From contig CM060733.1 of the NCBI GenBank assembly GCA_030704615.1, forward strand, positions 36,580,001 to 36,644,000: DNA of 64,000 bases, given 5' to 3'. Positions 17,501-64,000 of this stretch are shown here, piece by piece. How positions within the stretch are numbered: position 1 is the stretch's first letter; every line of letters begins with the position of its first letter. Below the pieces are notes generated by a model that was not told where the DNA came from, did no database searches, and was given only the letters and a program-made list of their open reading frames with translations. A program made the translations under genes and the position numbers. The stretch is from Takakia lepidozioides. Lineage: Eukaryota > Plantae > Bryophyta.

Positions 17501-19124
17501 TGAAGTATTTTGCTACGCAGCCCAAGTTGTCCCCAAAACAACTTAGGTGGCAAGATACTTTGGCAGTGTTCGACGTGGATATCCAGTACAAACCGGGACG
17601 GGACAATGTGGTGGCCGATGCTTTAAGTAGAAAGCAGCAGCTCTTGTTGGTGTACAAGGGCGAGACGACACTCTAAAGGAAGATCCGGAAGGCTTGCCGG
17701 AAGGATGAGCTGGCAAAGTCCATGATGCAGGACTTGAGGATGGGGGTTAAATCGCAGTTCCACTTGCAAAATGGACTGCTCCGGTATAAGCAAAAGCGTC
17801 TCTACGTGCCGAAGGGAGGGATCAGGGATAGTCTCTTGAGAGAATGCCATGATAGCCCGCTTGCGGGCCACGGTGGAGCCAAGCGCACTGCGGCACTCTT
17901 GAAGAAAGAGTATTTCTGGCCCAAACTGAGGGAGGAGGCAGAGGAGTATGTCAAGACATGCCCCTGTGCCAACAAAACCGGAGCGAGTACAAAAAGCAAG
18001 CGGGGCTGTTACAAACCCTTGCCGATTCCAGAGGGGACTTGGGAAAGCGTCTCGATGGATTTCGTGACTGCTATGCCGCTGTCAAAAGGATTCGATGCAA
18101 TCATGGTGGTGGTAGATAGGTTCAGTAAAATGGGCCATTTCATCCCCACCAAGGAGACGGCAACGGCGGAGGAGACAGGGCGACTTTACTTCGCCCACGT
18201 CTTAAAGCATCATGGAGTCCCGAAGGATATTTTCTCGGACCGCGATCCAAAGTTTACGAGTAAATTCTGGAGAGCACTTTGGAAGAAGATGGGGACGAGG
18301 CTGAAGATGAGCACCGCCTTCCGACCTACGACGGACGGCCAAACGGAAAGAGTGAATTCTGTAGTGAAGCAATTCTTGCGGAATTACATGTCGGCAGACC
18401 AATCGGACTGGATGGAACACTTAGACGCGGCAAAGTTCTGTTATAATAACACAGAACACTCCGCAACGGGAGTTTCCCCTTTTGTGTTGGTCTATGGAAA
18501 AGCACCTCTGGTGCCGACAAGTTGGGCCGCCCAGGACGTTGAGGAACCGGCAGTAGCGGCGGTACTGGAAGAACGCGAGCGTTTGTTGAAGCTCGCAAAG
18601 TACAATATTGCCAAAAAGCTAGGAAACGGTATGAAAGGCAGGCAAATCGGAAGCGGAGGGAAGTGAAGTTTGAGGCAGGCACAGAGGTCTGGTTGAACAT
18701 CAAGAATTTCCGACTACCTCCAGAAGTGAGTCCGAAGTTCGTGCCTCCGTATGCGGGACCCTTTCGCATTCGGAAGGTTATGAATGAGGATGTGTATGAA
18801 TTGGAGCTGCCGGCAAACAGCAAGGTGCACCCAGTATTCCATGTCTCCCTTTTGAAGCCTTACTTCAAAGATGAAGCGCGTCCGAATCGGCATCAAGTGT
18901 TGCGTCCGCCACCTATGCTGTTGGATCATGAAAATGAACCTGAGTACGAGGTGGAGGCAATACTTAAGTCGAGGAGGTTCAGGAACCGAGAAACGGAGTA
19001 TCTCGTCAAATGGAAGGGCTATCATCATGTGGAGGCATCTTGGGTGCGTGCCTCAGAAATGGGAAACGCATCCGAGGCGGTTGCAGCTTTCGAAGGGCGA
19101 CCTCAAAAGCGGAAGAAGCGTTGA
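14584..19124 (+). pseudogene. Chromovirus gag-pol polyprotein (several frameshifts)
   Basis: CFNCGEPGHMAKKC, LVDTGASH, YIDD, HTDAS, GHGG..CP, VSMDFV, SDRD, GPF module, chromodomain EYEVEAIL..YLVKWKGY..ASW, and a C-terminal KRKKR. Confidence 0.95.
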
Positions 19125-20754: not shown

Positions 20755-22111
20755 GTCTGTGCGTTTGCCAACCTGGCAGCCCTGGAAAGGGGCAAAGAGG
20801 TGCATGGTTGCATCGCAAAAGCAGGAATTGTACCAGATGTGATTCTGAACAATACCCTCATGGACATGTATGCAAAATGTGGGTGCATCGAGCATGCGGA
20901 GGCAGTGTTTGACAGTATGGTTGAACGAGATTTGGTGTCGTGGAGTGCGATGATTGCAGGGTGCACAGCAAGGGCACGAGATGGAGGCTTTGGAGACCTA
21001 TGAGCAAATGATGGGGGAAGGGGTGAACCCCAACCACATCACGTTTGTTTCCATTTGCAATGCCTGTGCAAGCCTGGCAGCCTTGGAAAAGGGTAAAGAG
21101 GTCCATGGTGACATCGTCAAAGCTGGAATTATACACTGCCTTGGTAGACATGTATGCCAAATGTGGGTGCATTGAGGATGCGAATGGAGTGTTCGACAAT
21201 ATGACTGAACGAAATGTGGTGTCGTGGAACGCAATGATCGCAGGATATGCCCAACATGGTTGTCATAGGGAGATCCTCCAACTATTTGAAGGAATACAAA
21301 AGAATGGCTGAAAGCCAGACAGTCTCACCTTTATATGTGTTATCTCTGCATGCAGCCACACTAGCCTACTGAATGAAGGAAATCAAGATCATGGTGTCAC
21401 TCCGACAGTAAAGCACTTTGGCTGTATGGTGGACCTTCTTGGACAACTGGAATTGGCAGTGGATCTGATTAATAAGATGCCAATCAATCCAGATGTTGTG
21501 GTGTGGAAGGCCTTGCTTGGTGCCTGCAGAATCCATGGCAATGTGGAGATGGTTGAATGTGCGGCAACATCTATCCTCAAATGGGATGAACAGGATGCCG
21601 CAACTTATATGTTGTTATCAAACATCTATGATGCAGCTGGCAGGTGGCATGATACTGCAAAGGTGAGAAGAATGATGAAGGTCAGAGGGGTTAGAAAGGA
21701 GCCAGGTCGCTGCTGCATTGAGGTTGGCAACAGGGTGCACACCTTCGCTGTAGATGACAAGTTGCATCCCAGAATTAAGGAAATCCATGCTGAGCTGAGA
21801 AGATTGTCTCTGGGCAGATGAAAGGAGGCGGGGTATGTGCCTGACATGCGCTTTGTATTGCATGATGTGGGGGAGGAGGAAAAGGAATTTTCTCTTTGCC
21901 ACCACACTGGGAAGCTGGCCATTGGTTTTGGGCTGAGCAGCACGACCCCTAGGACGCCTCTCCGTCTCATCAAGAATCTTCGAGTGTGTAGTGACTGCCA
22001 CACCTCCACCAGTTCATCTCAAAGATTGTTGGTCGAGCAATTGTTGTATGGGACGCTAACCGCTTTCACCACTTTGAAGATGGTATTTGTTCTTGTGGTG
22101 ATTACTGGTGA
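20755..22111 (+). pseudogene. PLS-PPR-E-DYW pseudogene, 3' part
   Basis: PPR motifs, E1 VVWKALLGACRIHGN, PG box RKEPGRCCIEV, HHTGKLA (HxE mutated), [10 protein letters not shown], and CSCGDYW* ending at 22111. Multiple frameshifts and stops. Confidence 0.92.
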
Positions 22112-22993
22112 AAGGATGTTTTCTTGGCAAGATGCAAGTGTCTTGCTTCATTCTTTGATATGTGTAGCTACTCAGACCATCCACCATTTCCTGAGAGTCT
22201 TGACCATCATGTACTGCCAGAGAGGGCTAGAGGATCGGATTCATGAGGGTTTGACAGATTCAACAAAAATCATTGACGGAGGGTGGTTGAACACTGGGGG
22301 TTCTACTGCTCACAGTCCCGAATCATGTGCATGGATTAATAAAGGAGAAGTCCAAAACACTGGATGGGATGCCTTCCCTTCCTCACCCATTCATTATGTT
22401 CCTGTCAACAATGGCTAGGATGTTATCCCTTGCAATTCTATAGTTAATGACGAACACAATCTGTCAGGTGGGTGACTGATTGTTGGTAAGAGTTTTTAAT
22501 GTAACTCTGAATGTATTTAGCATAAAACATTTTGTGGAGTAAAAAAAAATGTGAAAAAATGGATTATATTGGTAAAATATAAAAGTACGTATCCAGTTAA
22601 CCCTTCATTGTTTACCAGGCTCAGATGGATCCCACTGACTTTTGCGTATGGCAATAATTTTCATACTTTCTTCAAGATCATTTATAGCCTCCTCGAGTAG
22701 GCCCTACCTCTCATCCAACAAGGGAAGACTCCGAGCCACTGGGAGAGCTGATACATCTGGCAATGAAATGTTTACCATTTTTCTTGCAAAAAAACAATGA
22801 AATACAAGACGTATGTATGTAACACCATGGGGATGACCCACCTTTTTTTTTTGTGAAAATTGAACATTGAAATGCAGAGACGTGACATGATAGCTCCGAC
22901 AATACTCCGCCATTTTTCTTCCAGAAATAAACAAAACACGGGATCTCTGTATGTTACACCATGGGGATGACCCACCGTGCAGAATTCTCAGAA

Positions 22994-23060: not shown

Positions 23061-23079
23061 TTTAGCGTGGAGCGTAATT

Positions 23080-24720
23080 CTAGGCTGTCATTGTATGTTG
23101 CTAGCAGCAAGGCAAGGATGTATGCATGATTTGTGCAGAGGCATGGATAGCTGAAGGAGCATGGATGGAGTGTGGGTTCCCTCTTATCAGAACCGGCCCT
23201 AAATTTCCATGTTGAATTCTGCAAGTTAGCTGGTTGAGTGAACCTTTGATAGTTGGAGTGACTTTGACATGATACTGCCAAAGCATCCAGAAATAGGTAA
23301 GAGAGACGAGGAGAAGCTGTGGAAAGAATACTTTTCTGACCACAGTCAATGGTGGGACAATCGAGGCAAAAAGGTGGATGCCTGTTGGATTACAGAGAGT
23401 AGCAGACGCAATGAGCATAGGAACTCTGAGTTGGGTGTTTCCTAGAACAAATCTAGGCTGTCATTGTCACTGTCACATAGAGAACGAACTAAGCTGTATC
23501 TCCGCTTAACCTCGGTAAATTCGTGGAAGTCCCTTGATGGGGTCCCAGGTGCTCAGTTGAGTTCACGTTGCGGCTTATCCTCAGATACATAGTAGAACAA
23601 GACTAGTGACATAACATACGCAACCAATCGAATCGTCTTTGTAAACAAGAAACCCCACGGGCAGCTGGCTGGAATACCAAAAGAAAGGATTAGAAGGCTG
23701 CACTTCCTCCACGTCCAATAAACCCTCCGCCAGGTACGACATCCACTTGACCTCGTGTTTGATGGCGAGGACTTATGTCTCTCACCGGAGAAAGGTGAAT
23801 GCCTGTTGGATTACAGAGAGTAGCAGGCGCAATGAGCATAGGAACTAGTGTGATAAGTTGAGTTGGGTGTTTCCTAGAACAAATCTAGGTTGTCATTGTC
23901 AGCTGTTAGTAGCAAGGCAAGGTGTTCAACAACATGGCGGAACGAGATGTGGTGTCGTGGAGTGCGATGCTCGCAGGATATGCACAGCAGGGGCGCGGGA
24001 TGGAGGCTTTGGAGACGTATGAGCAAATGATGTGCGAAGGGGTGAAGCCCAACCGCATCACGTGTGTGTGCGTTTGCAATGCATGTGCAAGCGTGGCAGC
24101 CCTAGAAAAGGGCAAAGAAGGGGTAGAGTGTGTGTACAGAATCATCCAAGAGGGCCAGATTTCAAGCACAAGATTACCTATGATTCCTTGTGGATCAATA
24201 GCTACAAGAAACCTGCATGGGTAGATGGTCAACTAAAGGCAACAGCTGCAGCGGCACAGTTGATAAAATCAGGCACCTCAACCATGACCACAGCCTCTGG
24301 AAGAGGATCAAGAGAGGGAGTCCACAATGCCTCTTCTGGCACTTCTGGGCATGTGAAGATGCTTTGTGAGGCAGGCAGACTGAAAGAGGCTCTACAAACT
24401 TTAAACCAATGAGGCATTTCAACAGATTCAAAAATGTATGTCTGTCTCTTGCATAAGTGCATCAAGGTGAAAGGCGAAAACAGGTGCACACTCACATTAT
24501 CCAAAGTGGATTCACGCCAAATGTTTTTCTCCTCAACACCCTTGTCAACATGTATGTTAAGTGCGAGAGCATCATGGATGCTCACCAAGTGTTCAACAGA
24601 ATGCCTCAACGATCTTTGATCACATGGAATATAATGTTGGCAGGATTTACCAAGCATGGGTGTGGTATGAATGCTTTGGAGACCTATGAGCAAATGATGG
24701 GGGAAGGGGTGAAGCCCGAT
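23080..24720 (+). pseudogene. Scrambled 5' part of another PDF-PPR paralogue
   Basis: EKLWKEYFSDHSQWWDNRGKK|GT (~23310-23374), three partial copies of the following intron, a displaced PPR piece (23920-24120), HPRGPDFKHKITYDSLWINSYKKPAWV, then the first PPR motifs with stops. Confidence 0.85.
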
Positions 24721-25233
24721 CCCCCACCACAGGGGCAGCCCCTCTTGTGTCCCGACCCCCTGCCCTCAAGGCAAAGGGCCGTGACATTGCCCTTGCCCTT
24801 TTCCAGGGCTGCCAGACTTGCAAACGCACACAAACGTGATGCGGCTTATGGCGGACAGAAGACGACATTCGATGGAGTGTGCTTTAATTGTGGGGAGTCC
24901 AGGCACATAGCCAAGAAGTGCGCGAAACCCCGACAATTGAACATGACTCGGGCGACCACGGAGCTGTCCGAAGAGTCCATCAACCGCTTGGTGGAGGCGG
25001 TAGTCGCCAAGATTTGCAAGGTAGGCAACTACGCTTATGAGTTGTATCAGGAGACTAGCCCCTTGCGTAAAGGGAGTCAGTTAATGTTCGTGAGTGGGAT
25101 AATTTCCGGAACTAACGTGTCGTTGTTAATAGACACAGGAGCCTCGCACTCCTTCATGACACCGGCAATGGCACGAAAGCTGGGGCTCCCGACAAGTGAT
25201 GTGGGGGCCTCTATTGAAGTGCGTTCTGCCAAA
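24721..25233. mobile_element. Remnant of a second copy of the chromovirus family: inverted LTR/PPR junction plus gag-protease fragment
   Basis: 24721-24786 is the reverse complement of the LTR start (TGTCACGGCCC...). 24787-24844 is inverted PPR sequence. 24841-25233 matches 15564-15955. Confidence 0.85.
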
Positions 25234-25920
25234 CACTACAGGAAAAGGGGGGCCTTAGTGACGCCCGCGCCACGCCGCAGCGTCGGGAAAATGCCCTTTT
25301 CGAGCACGCGGGAGGCGCAGAATTTGCGACGCCCGACCGTCGCCCTGCAGTCGCAAGGGCGTCGCCAAATGACGTCGCAAAAATGTGACGTATGGGGGTC
25401 GCGAGCCCCCGCCCCAACTCCCGCGACTGCCGGACGTTGGTTTTTCAGGCCGTCCGCGCCGATGGCAGGAGCCTCTTCGAGCGACGTCTTGCCGTCGCTG
25501 CCCTCCAGCCGACGGCGTTGGTGGGGGCGTCGGCGCGGCGTCGCATCCCCTTTTTTTTTTCTAACCTGACCGGGAGTCAACCGGGTGGTACGCCAAGCGA
25601 CGCCCGTGCGTTGCTGCCAACGACTATTGGGCGTGGCACAAAACAGCTGGAGTTGGTCTCCGCCACGCCCGGGCGTGGGTTGTTGCGACGCTCTAGCATC
25701 GCGTTTTTTTTAAAATTTAAAATAAAATAAAATGGCGCAGGCAGGGTGGCGGTCTCCGTGACGCCAGGGTGTCGCGGGTTGCGACCCCCGGACTAAAAAA
25801 CACGTCGCAGGGGGTGTCGGGCGTTGCTGCCCACAAATGGGGTTTGCGACGCCCGACCGTTGCGTCGTACGACCCCCGCCCAAAAAACACATCGCCCTTG
25901 GTGACGTGCTGCAATCGCGA
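25234..25920. mobile_element. Left terminus of a CACTA transposon inserted into the chromovirus remnant
   Basis: CACTACAGGAAAA starts exactly where protease homology stops (flank AAA). Many subterminal GCGACGCCC/GGGCGTCGC repeats. Right end not found. Confidence 0.85.
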
Positions 25921-36926: not shown

Positions 36927-39900
36927 TTACCAATAATCCCCACAAGCACAAACCCCATCTTCAAAGTGGTGAAGGCGGTTACCATCCCGTACACAATTGC
37001 TCGGCGAACAATCTTGCAGACGAACTTGGTGGAGGTGTAGCAGTCCACACACACACGAACATTCTTGATGACAGAGGCGTCCTAGGGGCTGTGCTGATCA
37101 GCCCAAAACCAATGGCCAGCTTCTCACTGTGGTGGCAAAGAGCAAACTCCTTTTGCTCCTCCAGCTCATCATACCATACAAAGCGCGTGTCAGGCACATA
37201 CCCTGCCTCCTTCATCTGCCCAGACAACCTTCTCAGCTCAGCATGCATTTCGTTAATTTTGAGATGCAATTTGTCATATAACAAAGGTGTGCACCCCGTT
37301 GTCAACCTCAATGCAGCAGTGACATGGCTCCTTTCTAGCCCCTCTGACCTTCATCATTTTCCTCCGATTTGCACTATTGTCCCACCTGCCAGCTGCAGCA
37401 TAGAGGTTTTATAGCAACAAATAAGTAGCGCCATCCTGCCTAGCATCCCACTTGAGAATAGATGTTGCCGCACGTTCAGCCATCTCCACATTGCCATGGA
37501 TTCTGCAGGCACCAAGCAAGGCCTTCCACACCACAGCATCTGCTTTGATAGGCATTTTCTTAATGAGGTCCTCTGCCTCATCCAATTGCCCCGCACGTCC
37601 AAGAAGGTCCACCATGCAGCCAAAGTGCTTTAGTGTCGGAATGACTCCATGATCTTGACTCAGGGAATCAAAGTAGCGTCTTCCTTCATCCAGTAGGCCA
37701 ACATGGCTGCAGACAGAGAGAACACATAAAAAGGTGACACTGTCTGGCTTCAAGCCTTCCTCTTGCATTCTTTCAAATAGTTGGAGGGCCTCCCTATGAA
37801 ATCCATGCTGGGCATATCCTCCGATCATCTCATTCCAGGACACCATATCTCGTTCGGCCATGTTGTCGAATACTCCCTTTGCATCTTCCATGCTCCCACA
37901 TTTGGCATACATGTCCACCAGGGTATTGTTCAGAACGATATCTGGTACAATTCCAGCTTTGACGATGTCACCATGGACCTCTTTGCCCCTTTCCAGGGCT
38001 GCCAGGTGCGCACATGCCTTGCAAACGCAAACAAACATGATGCGGTCGGGCTTCACCCCTTGCCACATCATTTGCTCATACGTCTCCAAAGCCTCCATCC
38101 CACGCCCCTGCTGTGCATATCCTGCCAACATCGCGTTCCATGATACCACATCTCGTTGAGCCATACTGTCGAACACTCCCTTTGCATCATCCATGCTCCC
38201 ACATTTGGCATACATGTCCACCATGGAAGTGTTCAGAACGACATCTGGTACAATTCCAGCTTTGACGATGTCACCGTGGACCTCTTTGCCCTTTTCCAGG
38301 GCTGCCAGGCTTGCACATGCATTGCAAACGCAAATGAACGTAATGTGGTTGGGCTTCACCCCTTCACGCATCATTTGCTCATATGTCTCCAAAGCCTCCA
38401 TCCCAAGCGCCTGCTGTCCATATCCTGCGATCATCGCGTTCCAGGACCCCACATCTCGTTCAGCCATATGGTTGAACACTCCCTTTGCATCCTCGATGCA
38501 CCAACATTTGGCGTACATGTCCACAAGAGTATTGTTCAGAATGACATCTGGTACAATTCCAGCTTTGACGATGTCACCATGGACCTCTTTGCCCTTTTCC
38601 AGGGCTGCCAGGCTCGCGCACGCATTGCAAGCGCCAACAAACGTGATGTGGTCAGGCTTCACCCCGTCCTGCATCATTTGCCCATACATCTCCAAAGCCT
38701 CCATCCCACGCCCTTGCTGTGCATATCCTGCGATCATCGTGTTCCACGACACCACATCTTGTTCAGCCATATTGTGGAACACTCCCTTCGCATCCGCGAT
38801 GCACCCACATTTGGCATACATGTCCATGAGGGTATTGTTCAGATTGACATCTGGTACAATCCCAGCATTGACGATGTCACCATGGACCTCTTTGCCCTTG
38901 TCCAGGGCTGCCAGGCTCGCACATGCATTGCAAACGCAAACGTACGTGATGTGATCAGGCTTCATCCCTTCCAGCATCATTTGCTCATAGGTCTCCAGAG
39001 CCTCCATCCCACGCCCCTGCTGTGCATATCCTGCAATCATCGCATTCCAGGACACCACATCTCGTTCAGCCATATGGTCGAACACTCCCTTTGCATCTTC
39101 AATGCTCCCGCATTTGGCATACATGTCCACCAGGGCAGTATTTAGAACGACATCCGGTACAATCCCAGCTTTGACGATGTCACCATGGACCTCTTTGCCC
39201 TTTTCCAGGGCTGCCAGGCTCGCACATGCATTGCAAACGCAAACAAATGTGATGCGGTTTGGCTTCACCCCTTTCCCCATCATTTGCTCATATGTCTCCA
39301 AAGCATTCCTACCACGACCATGCTTGGTAAATCCTGCCATCATTATATTCCACGTGATCAAACATCGTTCAGGCATTCTGCTGAACACTTGGTGAGCATC
39401 CACGATGCTCCCGCACTTAACATACATGTTGACAAGGGTGTTGTGTAGAAAAATGTTAGGCTTGAATCCACTTTGGATAATGTGAGCGTGCACCTGCTTT
39501 CCAGTTTGCAGGCCTTTCATCTTGATGCACTTATGCAAGAGACAGACATAAGTATCTGAATCTGCTGAAATGCCTCCTTGGTTTAAAGTCTGTAGAGCCT
39601 CTCTCAGTCGCCCTGCCTCACATAGCATCCTCACATGCCCAGAGGTGCCAGAAGAGGCATTGTGGACTCTCTCCCTTAGTCCTCTTTCAGAAGCTGTGGT
39701 CATGGTCGAGGTGCCTGATTTCATCAACTGTGCTGCCGCTGCTGCTGCTTCCAGTTGACCATCTACCCATGCAGGTTTCTTGTAGCTATCGATCCACAGG
39801 GAATCATAGGTAATCTTGTGCTTGAAATCCGGTCCTCTTGGATGAATCTGGACCCACACTCTATCCCTGCTCCTTCAGCTACCCCTGCCTCTGCACAAAT

Positions 39901-41616
39901 CATGTATATATCCTCGCAATGCTGCTAGTAGCTGACTATGACAGCCTGGATTTGTTCTAGTGAACACCCCAACCCTTTTTATCACACACTAGTTTTGATG
40001 CTGAATTGCTCCAAGGACTTATAAATATCCTGGGGGAGAAAGAGGATGACAACTTCGAATAAAGCTTTGAATTGCATACTGTTGTCTGCTTCTCTCTGTA
40101 ATCTAAAAGGCATTCACCTTTTTGCCTCGATTGTCCCACCATTGACTGGGGTTGGAAAAATAGTCATTCCAAAGTTTCTCCTCGTCTTTGTTATTTGTTT
40201 CTGGATACTTTCCTGCTGCCACATTGGCAGTAACTTGTCAAAATCACTCCAAACCATCATCAATCCACCCAACAAGCTTACTTGGCAGATTTCAACATGA
40301 AAATTTAGGGACGACTATGATAAAAGGGCAAATCAGGCCAAAAGTATGTTGAAGAAAAAGGTGTCCTCACCACATTGTCCTTGACCTTGTGTCATGAAAG
40401 CAGCTAGCTTTTCTTTCACCCATGGAGGATTCAACCGACCATCAACCCAAAAGGACCTCTTGTGTGTTCTGCTTGCGTCTGTAGTCAGGTGATATGGGCT
40501 TGGTCTGTGAGGAGAACCACCACGGTGCAGCAAAGCAGCCATACATTCAAGTCGACCTCCTAAGACCAAGCCGACCCTCCCAAGTCCCTTGTAAACACCA
40601 GGAGAGAATACCAAATCACGGAAGAACCCACATTTGCAGCAAGGACAAACCTCTTCACATCATCCACTAAGAAAGCCACACCTTGCAATTGCAGTTGTCC
40701 CACCATTGTCAAGGATCTTTAAAAAGCCCATGCCAGCTCTGCTCCATGCTTCAGAGTAGACCTTTGTGCCGGAAAATCCAACACCGTCAAAATTTTGACA
40801 AGTTACCTGATGGACAAGTACTAGTGAGCTTTCAACAACATTCATGCAAGTCACTTTGGGCTCCATTGGACTCTACAAAATGAGGAACATACGAAATGTC
40901 CAAATTTACACAGATGCTAAACCAGCTTATGTCTGTAGTCTGGAGATATTGGGGTGGTCTGTGAAAGCCAGAGTCTCAACCTTCCCCAGTACCTTGCAAA
41001 CTCCAGGGAAATGACCTTTCCCATCCTCCTTTCATGCCCTGCTCAGGAAGAACAACCTCTCATACGGACAGTAAAAGCAGTTTTTGGAAAGCAAAGGGAG
41101 ATTCTCACTTCACTCAACAACTAGGGTACAATCCCGTCCACACAGTACGATCATACCAGTGTTCAGTCAAACTCCCTCAGACTCCTTCTCATCCTACGTG
41201 GACAAAGCTCACCTTATCATGGCTACTGTCCCAGCATTGCGATGGATCTTGAGAGAACTGCCGGCTCCGTTCCATGTTCCAGCGTTGACCTACGCGCCAG
41301 AAATACCAATTATCCGTCTTGTCTAACCATCCCGCGCGTTTCATACATAGAACACAGCGACCCCAAAAAAGGAAACCGCGAAGTGTTTCGTGTTATTACC
41401 TAGTTTGAATGGCATCCCTGAAGGCGCCATAGCCACCCTACGCAAGCGACTCCGTCCTCTGCGCAGTGCCAAGGGGGATGCCGCTTTCAGCTCCACAGCC
41501 CAGCCCTTTAATCCGCTGCATGACGCGAATTCTCTCGCATGGCCGAAGCGAGAGGACAGAGCCTTGCATATGGAGTAAGAATGCGCGCGCAGGAAAACGC
41601 GGGAAGACGCTGCCAT
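36927..41616 (-). pseudogene. Organelle-targeted PLS-PPR-E-DYW editing-factor gene with N-terminal OSB-type PDF motifs (disrupted)
   Basis: Transit-peptide-like exon 41616-41400 and three intron-split PDF motifs. The 816-aa ORF has ~20 PPR motifs and E1. A TAA replaces Ser in E2 (37409). The frameshifted DYW has HHSEKLA and CACGDYW* ending at 36927. Confidence 0.88.
37850..39365 (-). repeat. Five highly similar 303-bp P-L-S triplet repeats
   Basis: 101-aa unit VVSWNAM../HITFVCVCNACASL../VVLNTALVDMYAKCG.. repeated with high DNA identity. Confidence 0.95.
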
Positions 41617-46715: not shown

Positions 46716-46860
46716 CTATCCCAAGCAGTGTGGACACAACCAATCTCCGTCAGGAACCTTCTCAAGAGGTGGTGTCAAGCATCCCATATGCCAACCCCTT
46801 GAGCATCGATCACACACCAGCATGGTGGCTGCCCCTTTGGCAGACCCACAGAGCATGCAC
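46716..46860 (-). other. PHD finger at the C-terminus of the integrase
   Basis: CMLC..MLVCDRCSRGWHMGCLTPPLEKVPDGDWLCPHC, a C4HC3 pattern with the conserved W. Confidence 0.95.
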
Positions 46861-49719
46861 CTCAAACCTGCAGGTACCACTACCAAGTTTGGGTCAACTC
46901 TGCCATCGACATTGGGAAGGTGACATGGCGCACAATTACGCACATGGTCCTTCCAAGTCATGCCATCCCGACCCTCCAAGATCAGGACCCTTGAGGGCAA
47001 CACCTCTCGAACCCTCAGAATAACATGCCCTGCAGTAACATCCAGAGTCGTAGGAGCAGTCTGCTGCAAATAAACATAGTCACCAGGGCTAAACCTCCGA
47101 ACCCCAGGACGATATCCTCCACCACGTATAGTGGCATACCTCAACGTATCACGGTGTTGTGCAATGGCAAGGTTCTCAAAAGCCATGGGCATGACTTTCT
47201 TGAACAACTCTGCACGCTGATCACATGCACGTACCCACACGTCCGGATTGTCAAGGTTAAGAACTTGAGCAGTGTCCCTACAAATGGCTGCAGGCAAATC
47301 CGGCTCTCGGCCAAAGAGAAGGAAATATGGTGAGAAGGAGGCAAGTGATGCTTATTTGCTGAACCTGTAGCCCATGGCTAACCAAGGAACCTGAAGATCC
47401 CAATCTCTTAGGTGTCCCTTCTGCAAGCCATACTTGCGCAAACCCCTCTTCACCGTCTGAACAATTCTCTCTGAAAAGCCATCAGCCTCAGGATGATCCC
47501 GAGAAGTGGTGCGGTGGTCTATCAAGGCTTTATCACACAAAGCCTGAAACTCCCCAAGAACTCTCTCCCTTGGTCCGTGAGTACCTCAGCTGGAGCACCA
47601 AATCGGCTAAGCACACGATCCAAGAATGCATACGCAGCCCCTCACTAGCCTTGTCAGGCAATGGAACCAACTCAATCCACTTGGAGAAATGCTCCACCAT
47701 CACCAACACATATCTGTGGTGGCGCATAGTCAGTGGCAACGGTCCTACGAAGTCAAGACTCCACCTGTAGCCCAATCCCATGATTGGTAAAGGATGCAAC
47801 TGTGGTGTAGGGGTGTTGAATGAAGCACGCACCCTGTCACACACCATGCACCTAGCCACGAACTGTTGCACCTCTGTATGCATACCACACCACAAATACT
47901 GCCCTTGCAGTAAACTGTGAGTGCGTCGCACTCCAAAATGCCCCAAATCCCCATGGGTATGCCGCACTAACCGTGCACGCTGTGTGGGGTGAGGCACAAT
48001 CATCACCCGACCATCCTCCCACACTCGAAGTAGGTGTATCCCCTCCCACTTGAACCTCTTGGCTCGTTGCAGGATCCCATCCCTCTCCCTGGCAGTCATA
48101 GTGGCTGTCGTGTCTCCCGTGCGGAGGTAGTCCAACACAGCCGAATCCTCATGTATATCTCTGGCAGCACCTGGCTCATCACTAGCCTTAGGGTCCTCAG
48201 ACACGCCGTCTACAGTCATCCCTGTTGTAGGTCCAACCTGACCTCCCGATGCCAAGATACACAAAAATGCAGATGCGTGTCATCCCGGCACCATCTCCTC
48301 GTCCGTCTCACCATGCCACCGAGCTCCAGTGTCATCCTGTTGGCTCATGCATGGATTGCGACTCAATCCATCCGCATCCCGATTGACCAAACCCGATCGA
48401 TGCACAACCTGAAAGTCATACTCCTGGAGTATGAGTGCCCACCGTGCAAGCTTCCCCGTAAGCCTGTCTGACTCCATCAACCACTTGAGTGGCTGGTGAT
48501 CCGTAACAAGGGTGAAAAGATTGTCGTATAGATAGCACCTGAAGTGTGCCATGGCCCACACTGCAACTAAGCACTCTCCCTCATATGAGCTGTACTTAGC
48601 CTCTGCAGCGTTGTTCGAGCGGCTAACATAAGCCACTACGAACTCTCTTCCCTCATCATCCACCTGTGTGAGCACGCTCCAAGCCCCAGCATGCTCCAAT
48701 CCGTATGCAGCTGAAAGGGACGCCCCCTGATAGGTCGTCTCAGGATAGGCGCCGAGGTCAACCTCGCCTTGAGCTCTTGAAAAGTTTGTTCCTGCTCATC
48801 TTCCCACTGCCACTCCTGGTCCACCTTGGTCAGCTTGGTTAGAGCCTTTGCAATGGTACTAAATCCCTTGACAAACCGTCTATAATAGTTTGTCAACCCC
48901 ATGAAAGCTCGAACTCGGCTCACATCCGTGGGGCGTGGAATTTGTGCAATGGCCTCTACCTTAGTCTGCTGTACCCCCAATCCTCCAGGATATATCATGT
49001 GACCCAGATACTCAATCTGGTTGTGGAAAAACTTGCACTTCCCCGGATGCAACTTCAATCCGTGCGCTCTCAAGCGCTCCAATACCACCTGAAGGTGTCT
49101 CTCATGCTCCTCCATCGTAACACTAAAGATGATGATGTCATCTATGTAGCACCGAGCAAAGTCCACCCCTGCTAGAATCCTATCCATGACTCTCTGAAAC
49201 TTTGCAGGAGCATTCTTAAGCCCAAATGGTAAGAACCGCCACTGATATAGCAATCCTTGCCGTGCTCATTGATCCCCCAGAATGTCGTCTTCTGCTTGTC
49301 CGCCTCCTTGATTGGCAACTGGTGATATCCGGATCGTAAATCCAAAGTGCTAAAGACCTTAGCATGCCCGATGGCATCAAAGATCTCCTCTGGTGTTGGC
49401 ATGGCATACTTATCGGACTTGTCTGACGATTTACAGGCCGGTAATCACCGCACATACGTCTCTCCATCCAATTGCCATAGACATCCTTCTTGGCTGGCAT
49501 CACTGTGGCTGAAGCATACTCTCCACCAGAGAGCTCCACCAAACCTGCCTCCCAGAGATCTTGAGTCCTCATCTGAATCAAAGACCTCTCCATGTCACTG
49601 TATCTATAGGGTCTCCGAAAGATTGGCGTGTCAGTGGCCAACTCAATACGGATCTCTTGATCCTTCAGTGCTCCCAAGTCCTTCAAACTGAAGGCAAAGC
49701 AATTCCTGTAAGCCCTCAA
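46861..49719 (-). pseudogene. RT - RNase H - DDE integrase of copy 2 (frameshifted)
   Basis: RMCGDYR, LDLRSGYHQ, LPFGLKNAP, YIDD; LHTDWS, YEGECL, TDHQPL, DADGLSR; GHFG..CMVC, WSLDFVGPLP, ADGFSER. Confidence 0.93.
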
Positions 49720-50159
49720 GAACCGCCGTATACGTCGTCTCTCTCCTCCGGTGACAATGGGTCCAATGTCAGGCTCCCAATTGTCCTCCGTAACTGCAAC
49801 CTTAAGTCCAGTGGGCTTAGAGGTAGAGGACGTGTCCAGTGGTTGCTATGTTGCAACCTCTTGAACAGTACTCCCTACCTGCTCAGTCAGTAACAAGGCC
49901 TCATCCTGCCCCATCATCTCATCCTCAAGGACTTCCTCCACCCGAGAAAAATCCCCAACCTCATTTTTCATCGTCACCTTGGCTGCCAACTCCCTCTGAA
50001 CCTCGAGCACCTCCCACGTGTGCCATGGATGCCTACACCCCGTGGTCCTCACATGCTCGCCCCCACTCACTGCCTGTACCGTCTCGGTAGGCAGAGAGAC
50101 CATCGAGGGAATTGTACTCCGCACTCCGCGTTGCTCAGCCATAGCCAAGCTGATAATCT

Positions 50160-51075
50160 AGGTCACGCAATTGAGATCCATTGCTTGCCCCAACACTTGA
50201 CGACGTGATGCCTCAGAAGAGACGACACCGCCGTGGTACTAGTGGTAAAACCCATTGCCCGCTCACGCTCGTCAGTATTAGGCTCCACTAACTGCTGCAA
50301 CTGAGCATCCCACAGGAGGCCAGGTCCACTATCTCAGAAAGCATGCGATCCTGGGAAGCTGAGCAGTGTAGGTAATGCTGCTCGTGGTTGACCCACCTTG
50401 TTGACCACTGCCAAAGGCGAACGGTCATCATGTCTCACACGCTGAGACTGCCTCTCTGTGTCCAGAATGCTATCCACTGTGAGATGTGTTGGCCGCAGCA
50501 CCCCATCAAATGCACGCAAGAGCAGTGCGGGTGGCATCAAGTTAGTCCACCATAGCCGTGGACGATGAGCCCGTGACCCCACTGTAGCTGCATCTAGCAA
50601 CACTGCTGACCCAAGCCACGACCGACTTGATGCACACTGGCCATCACCCTGGCCCGAGAATCGCCCATCAGTGGCACATTCTCCAAGATGTATGTTGGAG
50701 ATACAGCTTGATGAAGCTGCAAGTGGCGCAAAAACCCGCACCATCTCCCAAAAACAGACCCGACCTCGAGTCTCGCAATCCATTGTCATGCCCGACTGAT
50801 GAATGCCCTTGGCAGGCCAACCTGCCACTACCAGATCAATGGAGCCAACCCGCCTCCAAATCCTGGCAAGGCCTGCTGATATCCACGAATTGCAGACACC
50901 GACAACAACTCAAGGTACCGCTGCACCAACTGAGCAACATGGCGAAGTGAAACGCGTCGTGCAGTCTCATCTCTCTCCATATACAGGTACCGCTGAACTC
51001 GTACACCTGCCTGTAACACAGCAGCCAATCCGTGTCTAATCCCGCCAAACAAGTCCAGAAGACAAATGCCTTCAT
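50160..51075 (-). pseudogene. DNMT3-like C5-cytosine DNA methyltransferase domain embedded in pol
   Basis: Motif I LLDLFGGI, II YMERD, IV IDLVVAGWP/CQG (50819-50809, -1 shift), VI YILENV (50683-50675), VIII LLDAATVGSRAHRPRLWWTNL, IX-X ERERAMGF..RRQVLGQAM, all in canonical order. Confidence 0.9.
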
Positions 51076-51349
51076 CCGGATAGTGCCACACAATAGGTGT
51101 GGTGTCCAATGGAGACAACTGAGGTGGTCCTGGTGCAATCCCCGCACTCTCTCCTCCTCTCCTGACGGTACAAAAGCCTCCACCCAGGCTTGTTGCACCC
51201 GTCGATCAGCATCCCGCTGCAAATCCTTGCTCGTGCCCCACAATGGAGTCTGAGCAACCATGGTAGGCAACTCCGCCATACCATACATGTCATCTTGCTC
51301 TCCCGGAGGTGGCACATCCTCTGAATGAGTGTTGCCCTCAAGCAACTCT

Positions 51350-51840
51350 CTAGGCCAACTCACTGCTGAGGTGAATGCTGCTAGTGTCGGCATCTTGCCT
51401 CACTGGGCAAACCGCAACTCCTTCTATGAACGTCACAGGGAGCTGCACACGCCGGCCCTCCCTGACTGCCATGCGACCTATAGGAAGCTGATTCCTCCCA
51501 AAGTCCAGGGTGAAGCCCATGGGTACAACACTGCCCCACCAACTAGGACATCGTATGAGACCGCAATCTTCTGTCACAATGGCCTTGGCTCGCATCACTG
51601 AGCCATCTGTAGGGTGATCCGGCCGTAGTTTGATAGCCAACTCACGCCGTGTCATGCCCTAGCCTGCTCCGATCCTCCCAGAGACGTCTGTATCTGGAAA
51701 GGACAAGGCTCCATATCCGCCTCCGTGAGGCCCAAGCCTGCAATAGCAGCTCTGCCTAGCATCAATGGCTGAGCTCCCGAGTCCAACAAGACCCGCAGTG
51801 GTCGGTACCTCGTGGCCACCCTCTCTGCCTTCCGGTCCAC
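51350..51840 (-). pseudogene. Aspartic protease of copy 2
   Basis: RVLLDSGAQP catalytic motif, located between gag and the MTase. Confidence 0.8.
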
Positions 51841-60419: not shown

Positions 60420-60660
60420 GGCTGTGTTGAGCTGTGACAGGCTGTGTCATACTGTGTTACGCTGTGATAGGCTGTGATGCACTGTGGTAAGCTGTGATAG
60501 GCTGTGACACGCTGTGGTAGGTTGTGATAGGCTGTGTTGCGCCGTGCTGGGCTGTGATAGCTGTGTTGCCGTCCTTGCTGGGCTTGTGATAGGCTGTGTC
60601 ACGTCGTGATGGCTTGTTAGGCTGTGTGCGCCTTGCTGGCCTGTGATAGGCTGTGTCACT
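60420..60660. repeat. ~30-bp GCTGTGATAGGCTGTG tandem repeats downstream of pol
   Basis: Repeated GCTGTGATAGGCTGTG units. Confidence 0.75.
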
Positions 60661-60785
60661 TCTGTTTTGCCCACCCTGGTCATATATGCTGGGCCTAGCG
60701 ACAAGTGTTCATACTCCGTTCGTAACACTGGTGCAGCCCGTGACTGCTCTTGCGGTTCAACATGCAAATCATGCTGCAGGGGTTT

Positions 60786-63700
60786 GTCATGGATACCACT
60801 GTACCCCTTCAACTTATTTGCATTGACTCTTCCCAGCATTTCTTTGTTAATGGTTTGTAACATGGCGGTGTTGTTATCATACATCTTTTGTATGACATAA
60901 GGTCCTTTCCACGGTGATTTAAGCTTAGAAGCTTGAATCTTTCCTTTCTTCTGCAACCATAGAACCAAATCCCCCGTCTTAAAAGTCTTAACTTGCCTTC
61001 ATCAAACTGTTCCTTTCGCTTCATCTGAATTCTGGTCATATTATCAGCTGCATCAGCACGTACTTCTTCCACATGGTATAATTCATGTTTCCTGACCTTG
61101 ATGGAGTCTTGCAATTCCATTCTTTTTCCCCACTCCGTTCTCATGGTAGGTAACAGGAATTCCACTGGAAGTAAGGCTTCCATACCATAAACTAATTGGA
61201 ATGGTGTATACTTAGTGTGACTTTATATGAAGTCCTGTATGACCACAAAGCTGTCAGCAGCTTTGTATCCCAATCCGTTCTGTTTGCATTGACTATCTTA
61301 GCCAAGATAGTACATAGTATTTTGTTGGTAGCCTCTGCCTGCCCATTACCCTGTGGTAATATGTTGTACTCTTTCTATGCACAATCATAAACTCTTTAGT
61401 CAACAACTCAATGGTCTCATTCATGAAGTGACTTCCTTGATCACTGATAAATTCTAAGGGACAGCCAAATCGTGTAAGTATGTTCTCGTACAGGAACCTT
61501 GCTGTGGACTTGGCTGTGTTGTCCCTCAAAGCTTTAGCTTCCACCCACTTTGTAGTATAATCAGTGGCTGTAATTATGTACCTGTTTCGTGTATTCTTGG
61601 ATGGTGGGTTAATTGGTCCAACAAAGTCTAGTCCCCATTTCTGAAATGGTTCCGTAGGCATTGTAGGATGCAAGGCCATCCTTCCAGATCTCTGCAAAGG
61701 TCCTAGCCTCTGACATTCATCACACTTCTGACAATACTCGTGTACATCTTTGAACAAAGTAGGCCACCAGTATCCTGCGAGTAGTATCTTTCTACTGGTA
61801 GTCTCTTCTCCAAAATGACCTCCAGCCACTCCTTTATGAACTTCCGCCAAAACTTTATTTACTTCATGGTGGTACAAGCATCGTTTTAGTACTCCATCAG
61901 GTCCTAACTTATACATTCTGCTTCCTACCATAGTATAAGGTAAAGCTTTGATAGCGATTCTCTTCCTCTGCTCCTTACCATAACTAGGTGGGCACTGACC
62001 ATGAGCAAGGTAGTATCTGATTGGCCACTGCCAATCTAACCATTCATCTGCACTTCCTTGCACCTCCATTACAAATAAACTCGCATCAGGTAACTGATCG
62101 TCCACTCCTGTGGCGGCCTCTCCTGTTGTTAGTCGTGACAAATGATCTGCCACAAGATGCAAACGGCCAGGCTTGTAAATAACCTCGAACTCAAACTCAT
62201 GCAAGATTATTAACCACCTCGCTATCCTTCCACTTATCAAGGTTTGTTCACCAGATATATCAGAGCCTGGTGATCCACATAAACATAAACTTTCTTCCCA
62301 TAGGTAATGCCTGAATTTCTTCACTGCATAAATCATTGCCAATGCTTCTCTTTCCGTTGTACTATAGTTCCTCTCAGCACTGTTCATCAACCGGCTAGCA
62401 TAGTACACAGGTGAATCTATATTCCCTGTAACATTCTGGGCTAACACCGCTTCCAACGCTTCTCCTGATGCATCGCAGTGAACATGGAATACTACATGCC
62501 AGTGAGGGTTAATCAGTACAGGTGTAGTTGTTACTGACAGTGTAAGTTCCTCAAATGCCTGTTGACATTCCGCTGTCCGGCAAACACTGCATCTTTCTTC
62601 AGTAAGTTTGCTCAATGGTGCTGCTATTTGTGCATACCTTTTGACAAATCTCCTGTAATAACTGGTTTGCCCAAGGAATCTTCGTAGACTTTTAACATTC
62701 ACTGGTGGTGGAGAGGCTTTAATGGACTCTGTCTTTCTGGGATCCACAAGGAGTCCTTTTTACACACAATGTGTCCCAGAAGCACCCCTGAGTTCACACA
62801 GAAAGTACACTTCTCTGGATTCAGGCCCAGACCTCTCATCCTGCATCTGGCCAGCATAACTCCAATTTATGCAAGTGCTCATTCTTAGAGCTGTACACAC
62901 TGAAATCATCCAAGAACACCTGCATGAAATCATCCAGATACTCATGAAAAGATTCACTTATCACTCTCTGAAAGGTCGCTGGTGCATTACAAAGTCCAAA
63001 GGGCATGACTTTGTATGCATAAGCCCCCCAGTCTGTGATGAAAGCTGTTTTCCCTTGGTCTTCTTCTGCCACTTGCACTTGATTATAACCACTGAAGCCA
63101 TCCATGAATGAGTACATCTCATGGCCTGCCACAGTGTCTAATACTGCTTCTGTGAATGGCAAAGGGAAAGGATCTTTCTTCGTACAAGCATTCAGCTTCT
63201 TATAGTTCACACATACTCTTAGTTTGCCATTCTTCTTGGGAACTATAACAATGGGTGACAACCAAGTTGTATACTCTATTGGGTATATAAACTTAGCCTC
63301 AGCCAACTTCTTATCTCTTCTCCAACCTTCTGTGCGTAGTTGGGATTCATTCTATACCTCGCCTGCTTGATTGGTACTGACCCTGGTTCCAGTTCAATCT
63401 TATGCTGACAGACTTCAGGTGGTATCCCTTTTAGATCCTCATAGCTCCAAGCAAATACATCTCTGTATTTGATGAACAAGCTTTTAGCTTCTTCGAAGAA
63501 TTCCGGCTCCAAATCAGCTCCTACTTTCACCATCCTCGGTTCCTCTTTAGTTCCCACATTTACTTCTCTCACCTGCTCATCAGCTGTGATTGTCCAACCA
63601 GTCACCACTTCATCCTGTAAGCTCACAGTGGCTGGTTCTTCTAGGATTTCTATTTCTCCTTCTCTCTCTTCATAGAAATGTGATGGGTAAATGCTGGTTT

Positions 63701-64000
63701 CCTCTTCAGTTGGTGTTGCTGTCACTACACCACAGCAGATACCTCTCAAACAACTTAGGCTTTCCAGCCGCATCTCTGCAACCTGCTCCCACTCTGGGTG
63801 TGCAGCAAATAGGGTAGCTTCCTGCTCCTCATCCAGTCCTCCTCTCCAGTCATACTCTCTGACTCCTCGAGGTCTTCTTGTAGCAGGTAATCTACTAGAT
63901 TTCTTTGTGGTAATTTGTATCTCGTGTATCCCATTATGCACGGTTAGTAACTGAGAATTCCAGTCATGGAATACCCTGGCCTGTTTCAGCCACGGACGTC
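60786..64000 (-). pseudogene. pol (PR end, RT, RH, INT) of Athila-like element
   Basis: GRPWLKQA, DGFSGYNQ, MPFGLCNAPATFQR, FLDD, HCDAS, YSTTEREAL, GHFG..CDEC, WGLDFVGPI, SDQGSHF, WKGPY. Confidence 0.93.

What the first reader, a model, noticed from the sequence alone, without database searches (positions are those of the whole stretch)
39757..41616. RNA-editing PPR-DYW gene fused to OSB-type PDF ssDNA-binding motifs
Seen: splicing a phase-0 intron (40117-39848) gives EEKLWNDYFSNPSQWWDNRGKK|IHPRGPDFKHKITYDSLWIDSYKKPAWV in frame with the PPR array. Two more degenerate copies lie upstream with an intron at the same position (SWHGLFKDP*QWWDNCNCK|TKPISPDYRRK..WVDGRLNPPWV; FSQDPSQCWDSSHDK|TTPISPDYRHK), behind a transit-peptide-like exon (MAASSRVFLRAHSYS). 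Known: W..FF.NP..WWDNR..K.NP..PDFKHK....LW...P.WV is the PDF motif of organellar OSB proteins, which binds ssDNA. DYW is a cytidine deaminase. Inference: an editing factor tethered to nucleoid ssDNA, or merely one that borrowed OSB's promoter and targeting exons. No SSB/OB fold is evident.
Basis: partly seen in the sequence, partly recalled or inferred. Interest (0 to 1): 0.8.

Follow-up and report, generated by a model that had tools for sequence, protein, structure and literature searches.

The report
Decayed PDF-PPR-DYW RNA-editing gene copy
This is a decaying copy of a plant gene family that puts the small "PDF" DNA-binding module of OSB proteins in front of an organelle RNA-editing (PPR-DYW) protein. 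The combination is real and old, and I found no paper on it, but this copy has lost its editing enzyme end.

Summary
On the minus strand, exon 40212-40118 and exon 39847 onward are joined by a GT..AG, phase-0 intron (40117-39848). Together they encode one complete PDF motif in frame with an 816-codon PLS-type PPR array. Two decayed PDF copies, each with an intron at the same position, lie upstream behind a presequence-like first exon.

The title is wrong on one point: this copy is not a working PPR-DYW gene. A TAA stop cuts the E2 motif. The DYW domain behind it has three frameshifting deletions and has lost a zinc-ligand histidine. The two upstream PDF copies carry stops and a frameshift.

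The architecture itself is inherited.
- Annotated proteins of a lycophyte, mosses, a liverwort and a fern carry 1-3 PDF motifs in front of PPR arrays.
- A profile built from those motifs finds named OSB3 proteins at E about 1e-33.
- The intron inside the motif sits at the same place and phase in a liverwort OSB gene.
- No OB fold accompanies the motif here.

One oddity remains. The middle of the gene has no disabling lesion and shows dN/dS of 0.3-0.5, against 0.9 in the dead tail.

I found no paper on PDF-PPR fusions. This scan has already noted the family many times elsewhere in this genome. RNA evidence could not be obtained.

The parts
41400..41616 (-). Exon 1: ATG at 41616, 72 codons plus 1 base, rich in Arg/Ser/Ala with only two acidic residues (looks like an organelle presequence). 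Donor GT at 41399-41398, phase 1.
   Evidence: reading the sequence directly. No similarity to any fetched OSB or PPR protein. The targeting role is inferred from composition only.
41213..41289 (-). PDF-1a relic exon (..FSQDPSQCWDSSHDK). Acceptor AG at 41291-41290 (phase 1), donor GT at 41212-41211 (phase 0).
   Evidence: tblastn with Diphasiastrum three-PDF proteins, E 8e-4. Profile domain E 0.027, positions 6-24.
40917..40958 (-). PDF-1b relic (TTPISPDYRHK). It runs into a TAG stop at 40919-40917, and the LW..PPWV third of the motif is missing.
   Evidence: The match is weak, but it is collinear and lies behind an AG acceptor at 40960-40959.
40682..40771 (-). PDF-2a relic exon (MEQSWHGLFKDP*QWWDNCNCK) with an in-frame TGA at 40711-40709 and a second one at 40753-40751. 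Donor GT at 40681-40680, phase 0.
   Evidence: tblastn E 8e-8 to P0002.
40371..40504 (-). PDF-2b relic exon. PDYRRK (40489-40472) and ..FWVDGRLNPPWVKEKL.. (40470-40402) lie in different frames, which fits a one-base insertion near 40471. Donor GT at 40370-40369, phase 1.
   Evidence: the two frames; E 6.6e-9; E 5.5e-6, profile positions 33-55.
40118..40212 (-). PDF-3a exon, the intact first half of the motif (..EEKLWNDYFSNPSQWWDNRGKK). Phase-1 acceptor (cag|cag|GA, AG at 40214-40213 or 40217-40216), phase-0 donor.
   Evidence: Profile E 3.4e-10, positions 2-25.
39848..40117 (-). Intron inside the PDF motif: 270 nt, GT..AG, phase 0, after Lys-22 of the motif.
   Evidence: The same position and phase occur in Calypogeia fissa and Sphagnum jensenii PDF-PPR genes and in the Riccia fluitans OSB gene.
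39764..39847 (-). PDF-3b, the intact second half of the motif (IHPRGPDFKHK..LWIDSYKKPAWV), continuous with the PPR reading frame.
   Evidence: Profile E 2.9e-9, positions 24-54.
37412..39763 (-). Linker plus PLS-type PPR array and E1 motif. Together with PDF-3b this is an open frame of 816 codons with no stop or frameshift.
   Evidence: ORF 37409..39859. Pfam PPR_2 E 1.5e-107 and PPR E 1.3e-90. Best relatives are Diphasiastrum complanatum PPR proteins at 50-56% identity.
37806..39343 (-). 5.1 tandem copies of a 303-bp unit (one P-L-S triplet of 101 codons), 87% alike, inside the PPR array.
   Evidence: Between units dS is 0.19-0.38 and dN/dS 0.30-0.59.
37409..37411 (-). Premature TAA stop at the start of the E2 motif (LL*NLY where relatives have LLSNIY). 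The paralogue at 21540-22115 has TCA (Ser) here.
36927..37408 (-). Remains of E2 and the DYW deaminase domain. Deletions of 2 bp (about 37278/37277), 4 bp (about 37074/37073) and 1 bp (about 36994/36993). The CxDCH His is changed to Tyr (37039-37037). HSE (37131-37123) and the terminal GDYW (36941-36930) are still legible.
   Evidence: Pfam DYW_deaminase matches two pieces in different frames: profile 1-44 (E 7.5e-9) and 72-93 (E 2.3e-8). DNA alignment to the paralogue. Frame-corrected translation. tblastn with P0004 gives three frames.
23076..24720 (+). Paralogue B, a scrambled dead copy. PDF-a exon at 23311-23373. The intron holds a 201-bp PPR scrap (23919-24119). PDF-b plus the first PPR motifs are at 24140-24720, with a TGA and frameshifts, cut off by a gypsy gag sequence.
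   Evidence: (88.9% identity to copy A over 611 bp).
20760..22111 (+). Paralogue C, the 3' part of another dead copy (PPR, E and DYW). It has a stop, in-frame deletions and frameshifts, and HSE is changed to HTG.

Best explanation
The locus is a decaying member of a gene family that this plant shares with other seed-free land plants.

The ancestral gene had seven exons. They encoded an organelle presequence, three PDF modules, a PLS-type PPR array, and the E1/E2 and DYW cytidine-deaminase domains. Each PDF module was a two-exon cassette with a phase-0 intron after Lys-22.

In this copy only the third PDF module, the PPR array and E1 are still readable:
- PDF-1 and PDF-2 carry stops, a frameshift and a truncation.
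- A TCA-to-TAA change ends the frame in E2.
- The DYW domain behind it has three frameshifting deletions and has lost a zinc-ligand histidine.

So the copy cannot deaminate RNA, and I read it as a pseudogene, or at best a gene remnant.

Shown: the anatomy, the lesions, the homology of the motif to the OSB PDF motif, the presence of the same architecture in intact proteins elsewhere, and the shared intron.

Inferred: in intact members the PPR array selects the RNA site and DYW edits it, as in all PPR-DYW factors. The PDF module would add a second, non-specific contact to single-stranded nucleic acid. The module reached the PPR gene (or the OSB gene) by exon shuffling of a phase-1/phase-1 cassette.
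For: Anatomy and splice sites.

Lesions:
- Pfam finds the DYW domain in two pieces on different frames.
- tblastn with an intact Diphasiastrum protein needs three frames.
- The DNA alignment with paralogue C shows TCA>TAA and deletions of 2, 4 and 1 bp in this copy.

Family:
- 35 of the 120 best PPR relatives carry 1-3 full PDF motifs in front of the PPR array. They come from Diphasiastrum complanatum, Calypogeia fissa, Sphagnum jensenii and unnamed contigs.
- Further members occur in Adiantum capillus-veneris and Sphagnum fallax.
- P0091 of Calypogeia is annotated with PDF, PPR, E and DYW, and ends in DYW.
- Uninterrupted PDF-PPR-DYW reading frames lie on short run-assembly contigs L004 and L005.

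Homology to OSB:
- The profile of PPR-borne PDFs finds 1219 cluster representatives.
- Among them are Anthurium OSB3 (E 2.3e-33), Amborella OSB3 (E 1.3e-62) and proteins with a Pfam SSB domain.

Shared cassette:
- The same phase-0 intron and the same phase-1 exon start occur in Calypogeia and Sphagnum PDF-PPR genes and in the Riccia fluitans OSB gene.

The three-PDF layout matches Diphasiastrum P0013 and P0089.
Against: - No RNA data.
- The middle of the gene looks too clean for an old pseudogene. It has 0 disabling lesions in 816 codons, against 4 in about 160 codons downstream.
- dN/dS is 0.30 against paralogue B and 0.42-0.52 against C upstream of the stop, but 0.90 downstream (Fisher p = 0.016 for the 0.30 versus 0.90 contrast).
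- Exon 1 (phase-1 donor) could be spliced to the PDF-3a exon (phase-1 acceptor) without loss of frame.
- I have no reads, so single-base indels could be assembly errors. A substitution to TAA plus 2-bp and 4-bp deletions are unlikely to be.
Confidence: 0.6

Rival explanations
1. The gene is truncated but alive. After the nonsense mutation in E2 the gene lived on as a DYW-less protein: presequence, one PDF module, the PPR array and E1. Its mRNA would skip the four decayed PDF exons. It would act as an RNA-binding or site-recognition factor, perhaps with a deaminase supplied in trans, as E-class PPR proteins do in flowering plants.
For: - No stop or frameshift in 816 codons, while both flanks are riddled with them.
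- dN/dS of 0.30-0.52 upstream of the stop against 0.90 downstream.
- PDF-3 keeps every widely conserved residue.
- Its intron keeps GT..AG.
- The exon 1 donor and the PDF-3a acceptor are both phase 1, so the skip keeps the frame (read).
Against: - No RNA evidence.
- The comparison partners are themselves dead copies, so dN/dS cannot be assigned to this copy's branch.
- Some conserved PPR positions carry odd residues (KCWC, QQALG).
- The protein would end nine residues into E2. I did not compare this end point with described functional PPR classes.
- The locus lies among scrambled dead copies and retrotransposons.
Confidence: 0.27
2. The locus is a mosaic. The open middle part was recently copied in from an intact paralogue by gene conversion, or the locus was assembled from pieces of several copies by transposon-mediated capture. 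On this reading the clean middle says nothing about selection on this locus.
For: - The family is very large in this genome, and its PPR arrays are alike, which gives a substrate for conversion.
- dS to paralogue C differs along the gene: 0.23-0.31 upstream against 0.15 downstream.
- Neighbouring copies are visibly scrambled. One has a PPR scrap inside the PDF intron at 23919-24119, and there are loose fragments at 13-209 and 13414-13830.
- An unchecked first-reader note describes a Pack-CACTA element with captured PDF and PPR exons at the window's start.
Against: - A tract of at least 2.5 kb would have to start in or before the PDF-3a exon and end just before the E2 stop.
- No donor copy is at hand.
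- No transposon ends were found around this copy, though I did not search for them systematically.
Confidence: 0.1
3. One reading: an intact editing factor whose deaminase is tethered to nucleoid ssDNA by PDF motifs at this very locus.
For: The PDF motif is in frame with the PPR array. Per the reviews read, the PDF motif of AtOSB1 is sufficient for ssDNA binding (PMC6963530; PMC4166229).
Against: The E2 stop and three frameshifts in DYW. Two of the three PDF copies are dead.
Confidence: 0.03

Closest known systems
PLS-class PPR-DYW organellar RNA-editing factors (such as the DYW-type PpPPR proteins of Physcomitrium)
   Same: P-L-S triplet PPR array, E1/E2 motifs and a C-terminal DYW deaminase domain with HxE and CxDCH signatures. 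These are recognisable here and intact in relatives.
   Different: The family carries 1-3 PDF modules between presequence and PPR array. The extra domains that a 2022 overview lists for Physcomitrium PPR proteins are RRM, LAGLIDADG, SMR, NYN, CBS and SAP, not PDF (PMC9459714). This copy also has a dead DYW domain and a stop in E2.
[quoted passage not shown]
   Same: The roughly 50-residue PDF motif, in one to several copies. A profile of the PPR-borne motifs finds named OSB3 proteins at E 1e-33 to 1e-62. A liverwort OSB gene has the same intron in the motif.
   Different: OSB proteins have an SSB-like OB fold on the N-terminal side of the PDF motifs. Here there is none. None of the 155 PPR-type proteins fetched has an OB fold, and none of the 77 OB-type proteins has PPR motifs. 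In the PPR genes the motifs are N-terminal. The Sinapis alba OSB gene has its three PDF motifs in one exon.
E-class (DYW-less) PPR editing factors of flowering plants
   Same: A PLS array that ends in the E region without its own deaminase, which is what the open frame of this copy now encodes.
   Different: Those proteins keep E1 and E2. This frame stops nine codons into E2. No evidence that it is expressed or works.

Membership tests
PLS-class PPR-DYW editing factor | Tandem P-L-S pentatricopeptide repeats | tested here: met
   Pfam PPR_2 E 1.5e-107 with 13 stretches, PPR E 1.3e-90. 5.1 tandem 303-bp PLS units.
PLS-class PPR-DYW editing factor | Intact E1 and E2 motifs after the array | tested here: not met
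   E1 is readable. E2 is cut by TAA at 37411-37409, where the paralogue has TCA.
PLS-class PPR-DYW editing factor | Intact DYW cytidine-deaminase domain (HxE ... CxDCH ... DYW in one frame) | tested here: not met
   The domain is found only as two pieces in different frames. Deletions of 2, 4 and 1 bp, and CxDCH changed to CxDCY. HSE and the terminal GDYW are still legible.
PLS-class PPR-DYW editing factor | Import into plastids or mitochondria; C-to-U editing of a defined site | not testable with these tools
   Only the composition of exon 1 hints at a presequence.
OSB (organellar ssDNA-binding) proteins | PDF motif of about 50 residues | tested here: met
   The halves match the profile at E 3.4e-10 and 2.9e-9. 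13 of 14 invariant residues are kept. The profile finds named OSB3 proteins.
OSB (organellar ssDNA-binding) proteins | SSB-like OB fold on the N-terminal side of the PDF motifs | tested here: not met
   No Pfam SSB hit on any piece. A profile of 77 OSB-type OB folds finds nothing in the six-frame window.
OSB (organellar ssDNA-binding) proteins | Binding of single-stranded DNA | not testable with these tools
   Known for AtOSB1 and AtOSB2 only through the reviews read (PMC6963530, PMC4166229).
PDF-PPR-DYW family (defined here and in earlier reports of this scan) | PDF module or modules, split by a phase-0 intern intron after Lys-22, spliced in frame in front of a PLS PPR array | tested here: met
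   for this copy. for Diphasiastrum, Calypogeia and Sphagnum.

The most novel reading that the evidence does not exclude
In intact members of this family the PDF module is a working second nucleic-acid-binding surface on the editing enzyme. It might hold PPR-DYW editors on single-stranded DNA of the organelle nucleoid, so that transcripts are edited as they are made. Or it might raise their affinity for RNA in plants that, as I recall, have no MORF/RIP helper proteins. This locus would then record a second step: loss of the deaminase with retention of a PDF-PPR reader that still works.
Probability: 0.25. Interest if true: 0.8.

Novelty: new variant of a known kind. Interest (0 to 1): 0.45.

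Why it matters
PPR-DYW proteins are the site-specific C-to-U editors of plant organelles and are being turned into RNA base-editing tools. Their N-terminal regions are usually treated as mere targeting peptides.

A conserved module sits in front of many such editors from liverworts to ferns, and that module is known to bind single-stranded DNA in OSB proteins. It shares an intron with OSB genes. This suggests an unstudied layer in how seed-free plants run their very large editing systems. It can be tested with existing assays:
- editing in E. coli or moss with and without the module;
- gel shifts with ssDNA and RNA;
- nucleoid localisation.

This copy adds little to that. It shows how members of the family die (loss of DYW and of spare PDF cassettes), and it raises the question of whether a DYW-less remnant can stay useful.

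Tried and rejected
- A word-index search restricted to the first 60 residues (the PDF half) of the ORF gave nothing at E <= 0.01 in a database of 5.8 billion. The piece is too short. The full-length search plus a motif scan of the hits worked instead.
- Gene look-ups failed for P0005, P0129, P0206 and P0306. The Ceratopteris OSB locus came back without DNA.
- The PDF module folds with high confidence: pLDDT 95.7, helix-strand-strand-helix. No solved structure resembles it (Foldseek best E 6.5; VIA-align best Z 2.8). The fold gives no functional lead.
- A tree of 104 PDF modules is unresolved with only 55 columns. 17 of 20 PPR-borne modules fall in one clade (SH-aLRT 96) that also holds 7 OSB-type modules, so the direction of transfer cannot be read.
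- The idea that the frameshifts are small introns was rejected. They are 1-, 2- and 4-bp gaps against a 91%-identical paralogue.
- The idea that the PPR gene took over OSB's 5' end was rejected. Exon 1 matches no OSB, and the PDF motifs are C-terminal in OSB proteins.
Full report
WHAT IS THERE

The feature lies on the minus strand. The open frame listed at 39859-37409 (816 codons) begins, from 39847, with the second half of a PDF motif (IHPRGPDFKHK...LWIDSYKKPAWV). It runs straight into a PLS-type PPR array (Pfam PPR_2 E 1.5e-107).

The first half of the motif (..EEKLWNDYFSNPSQWWDNRGKK) lies 270 nt upstream and ends at 40118. The sequence between the halves starts with GT (40117-40116) and ends with AG (39849-39848), and the junction is phase 0.

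I built a profile from PDF motifs found on PPR proteins of other plants (alignment A2). Run against all six-frame pieces of the window, it matches the two halves at E 3.4e-10 (profile positions 2-25) and E 2.9e-9 (positions 24-54). The halves therefore meet exactly at the intron. 13 of 14 invariant residues are kept. So are all residues that are invariant or nearly invariant in a wider alignment of 104 modules.

THE REST OF THE GENE

With Diphasiastrum proteins that carry three PDF motifs as guides, the upstream region resolves into a seven-exon gene.

- Exon 1 (41616-41400) has an ATG and a basic, Ser/Ala-rich, nearly acid-free peptide. Its donor is phase 1.
- PDF-1a is at 41289-41213 and PDF-1b at 40958 onward.
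- PDF-2a ends at 40682 and PDF-2b is at 40504-40371.
- PDF-3a is at 40212-40118.
- The last exon is the long one.

Each PDF-a exon starts in phase 1 and ends in phase 0 after the same lysine. Each internal PDF-b exon ends in phase 1. One module is therefore a symmetrical 1-1 cassette of two exons.

Only the third module is intact:
- PDF-1b runs into TAG (40919-40917) and lacks its last third.
- PDF-2a has in-frame TGA codons (40711-40709 and probably 40753-40751).
- PDF-2b has its two parts in different frames.

THE 3' END IS BROKEN

The open frame stops at TAA (37411-37409), inside the conserved LLSNIY stretch at the start of E2. A 91%-identical paralogue in the same window (copy C, 21540-22115) has TCA there.

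Behind the stop, Pfam still recognises the DYW deaminase domain, but only as two pieces on different frames. An intact Diphasiastrum protein aligns over three frames. Against copy C this copy has deletions of 2, 4 and 1 bp. The histidine of CxDCH is now tyrosine. HSE and the final GDYW remain.

These gaps cannot be introns. This copy cannot make a deaminase, so the finding's title ("RNA-editing PPR-DYW gene") does not hold for it.

THE ARCHITECTURE IS INHERITED, NOT A LOCAL ACCIDENT

The window's own proteins are not in the protein collection. The best relatives are 50-56% identical PPR proteins of the lycophyte Diphasiastrum complanatum.

Of the 120 best hits, 35 carry one to three complete PDF motifs in front of the PPR array. 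They come from Diphasiastrum, the liverwort Calypogeia fissa, the moss Sphagnum jensenii and unnamed contigs. Cluster look-ups add Adiantum capillus-veneris and Sphagnum fallax. None of the conifer or Ginkgo hits in that list shows the motif, though N-terminal exons are easily missed in annotation.

The Calypogeia protein P0091 has PDF, PPR, E and DYW and ends in DYW. Two short run-assembly contigs (L004 from SRR2103735 and L005 from SRR4210093) hold uninterrupted PDF-PPR(-DYW) frames of 1154 and 1371 codons. That is expected of assembled mRNA, but I could not check the library type.

IT IS THE OSB MOTIF

The profile of PPR-borne motifs was searched against 1.84 billion cluster representatives. 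It finds 1219 proteins at E <= 0.001.

Most of the top 150 are 250-530 residues long with two to five motifs near the C-terminus. Sampled ones have a Pfam SSB domain or are named OSB3 (Anthurium E 2.3e-33, Amborella E 1.3e-62) or OSB1-like (Drosera).

Among the 310 proteins fetched, 77 have the OB fold and 155 have PPR motifs. None has both. The window has no OB fold. So this locus shares a module with OSB proteins and is not an OSB.

According to the reviews read, the motif has about 50 residues and occurs one to four times after the OB fold. In AtOSB1 it is sufficient for binding ssDNA, and AtOSB1 and AtOSB2 prefer ssDNA to dsDNA or RNA (PMC6963530, PMC4166229, PMC6451138).

The intron after Lys-22 of the motif is at the same place and phase in four genes:
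- this copy (..NRGKK | IHPRGPDF..);
- the Calypogeia PDF-PPR gene (..NRSEK | VNPRYPDF..);
- the Sphagnum jensenii PDF-PPR gene (..HRLEK | VNARYPDF..);
- a true OSB gene of the liverwort Riccia fluitans, with an SSB domain plus one PDF (..NRVNK | KNPKAPDF..).

In the Sphagnum and Riccia genes, where I checked it, the exon holding the first half also starts in phase 1, as it does here. A Sinapis alba OSB gene has its three motifs in one exon, so flowering-plant OSB genes have lost the intron.

The shared two-exon, 1-1 cassette points to exon shuffling at the DNA level between an OSB-type and a PPR-type gene before the bryophyte, lycophyte and fern lineages sampled here diverged. The direction cannot be read from a tree of 55 columns.

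Exon 1 resembles no OSB, and in OSB proteins the motifs are at the other end.

AN ODDITY

The lesions are not spread evenly. Downstream of the TAA there are four disabling changes in about 160 codons. The upstream PDF exons have at least four. The 816 codons in between have none.

If the array had drifted as long as the tail did, roughly 15 indels would be expected in it. That estimate scales three indels per 470 bp to 2448 bp.

Nei-Gojobori estimates point the same way:
- dN/dS 0.30 against paralogue B over 190 codons;
- 0.42 and 0.52 against C upstream of the stop;
- 0.90 against C downstream of the stop.

Fisher p is 0.016 for the 0.30 versus 0.90 contrast.

Exon 1 and the PDF-3a exon are phase-compatible, so a transcript that skips the four dead exons would stay in frame. 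This leaves room for a truncated but still useful PDF-PPR-E1 protein (rival 1). It also leaves room for a recent patch by gene conversion in a family with very many similar copies (rival 2).

Against a live gene:
- there are no RNA data;
- both comparison partners are themselves dead;
- a few conserved PPR positions carry odd residues;
- the neighbourhood is full of scrambled copies and retrotransposons.

I lean to a dead or dying copy.

MECHANISM

For intact members, the PPR array reads the RNA upstream of the target C and the DYW domain deaminates it. This is established knowledge for PPR-DYW proteins.

What the PDF module adds is inference. It is most simply a second, sequence-independent contact with single-stranded nucleic acid, either nucleoid ssDNA or the RNA itself.

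The module is predicted with high confidence as a small helix-strand-strand-helix unit (pLDDT 95.7). It has no counterpart among solved structures.

NOVELTY

In the library I could search, no paper combines the PDF motif with DYW or PPR proteins. A 2022 overview of Physcomitrium PPR proteins lists RRM, LAGLIDADG, SMR, NYN, CBS and SAP as additional domains, not PDF. The original OSB paper and the large PPR surveys are not held, so this is absence in a partial library.

This scan has already noted the same family many times on other DNA of this genome. 316 notes hold the words searched (PDF, OSB, PPR, DYW), several follow-ups reach the same family-level conclusion, and one describes another copy that has lost its DYW end. 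I re-derived the family-level points independently here.

LIMITS

- Exons were searched one by one, by reference.
- The species was not identified.

Noticed in passing
window 23076-24720 (+): Paralogue B is scrambled. The 3' end of the PDF intron lies in front of the PDF-a exon, and a 201-bp PPR scrap (23919-24119) sits inside the intron. The frame has a TGA (about 24411) and frameshifts. The array is cut off at about 24720 by a gypsy-type gag sequence (ORF 24457-25569).
   Followed up: partly
window 20760-22111 (+): Paralogue C is the 3' part only (PPR, E and DYW) of another dead copy. It has a stop, two in-frame deletions and three frameshifting indels, and HSE is changed to HTG. It lies directly upstream of paralogue B on the same strand.
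   Followed up: partly
window 13-209 (+) and 13414-13830 (+): Loose fragments of the same family. One is a PDF-b half with the intron end, 89% identical to 39751-39947. The other is a PPR piece of about 400 bp. A first-reader note calls the first one part of a Pack-CACTA element; I did not test that.
   Followed up: no
window 39455-39568 (-), residues 98-135 of the 816-codon ORF: Pfam 'Transposase-associated domain' (PF13963) matches the first PPR-like helix pair at E 2.7e-13, above its cut-off. A relative, P0076, carries the same precomputed hit. This is probably a cross-match of the model with PPR-like sequence, but it was not examined.
   Followed up: no
proteins P0123 (Effrenium voratum), P0127 (Sanguina aurantia), P0121 (Kingdonia uniflora), P0168: PDF-like repeats are not confined to land plants. 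There are 9 matched stretches in a dinoflagellate protein and 5 in a snow-alga protein. A Kingdonia protein has 13 stretches. One 1526-residue model joins PDF motifs to a kinesin motor, possibly a fused gene model.
   Followed up: no
literature, PMC4166229: That review lists no OSB gene for Selaginella moellendorffii and states that OSB was lost in 'Pteridophyta'. Here OSB-type proteins (SSB plus PDF) were found in Ceratopteris richardii and Pteridium aquilinum. Whether lycophytes keep the PDF motif only on PPR proteins was not checked.
   Followed up: no
window 14739-19124 (+), 46716-51393 (-), 60447-63941 (-): Three retrotransposon bodies with gag, protease, reverse transcriptase and integrase frames. 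They surround the cluster of dead PDF-PPR copies.
   Followed up: no
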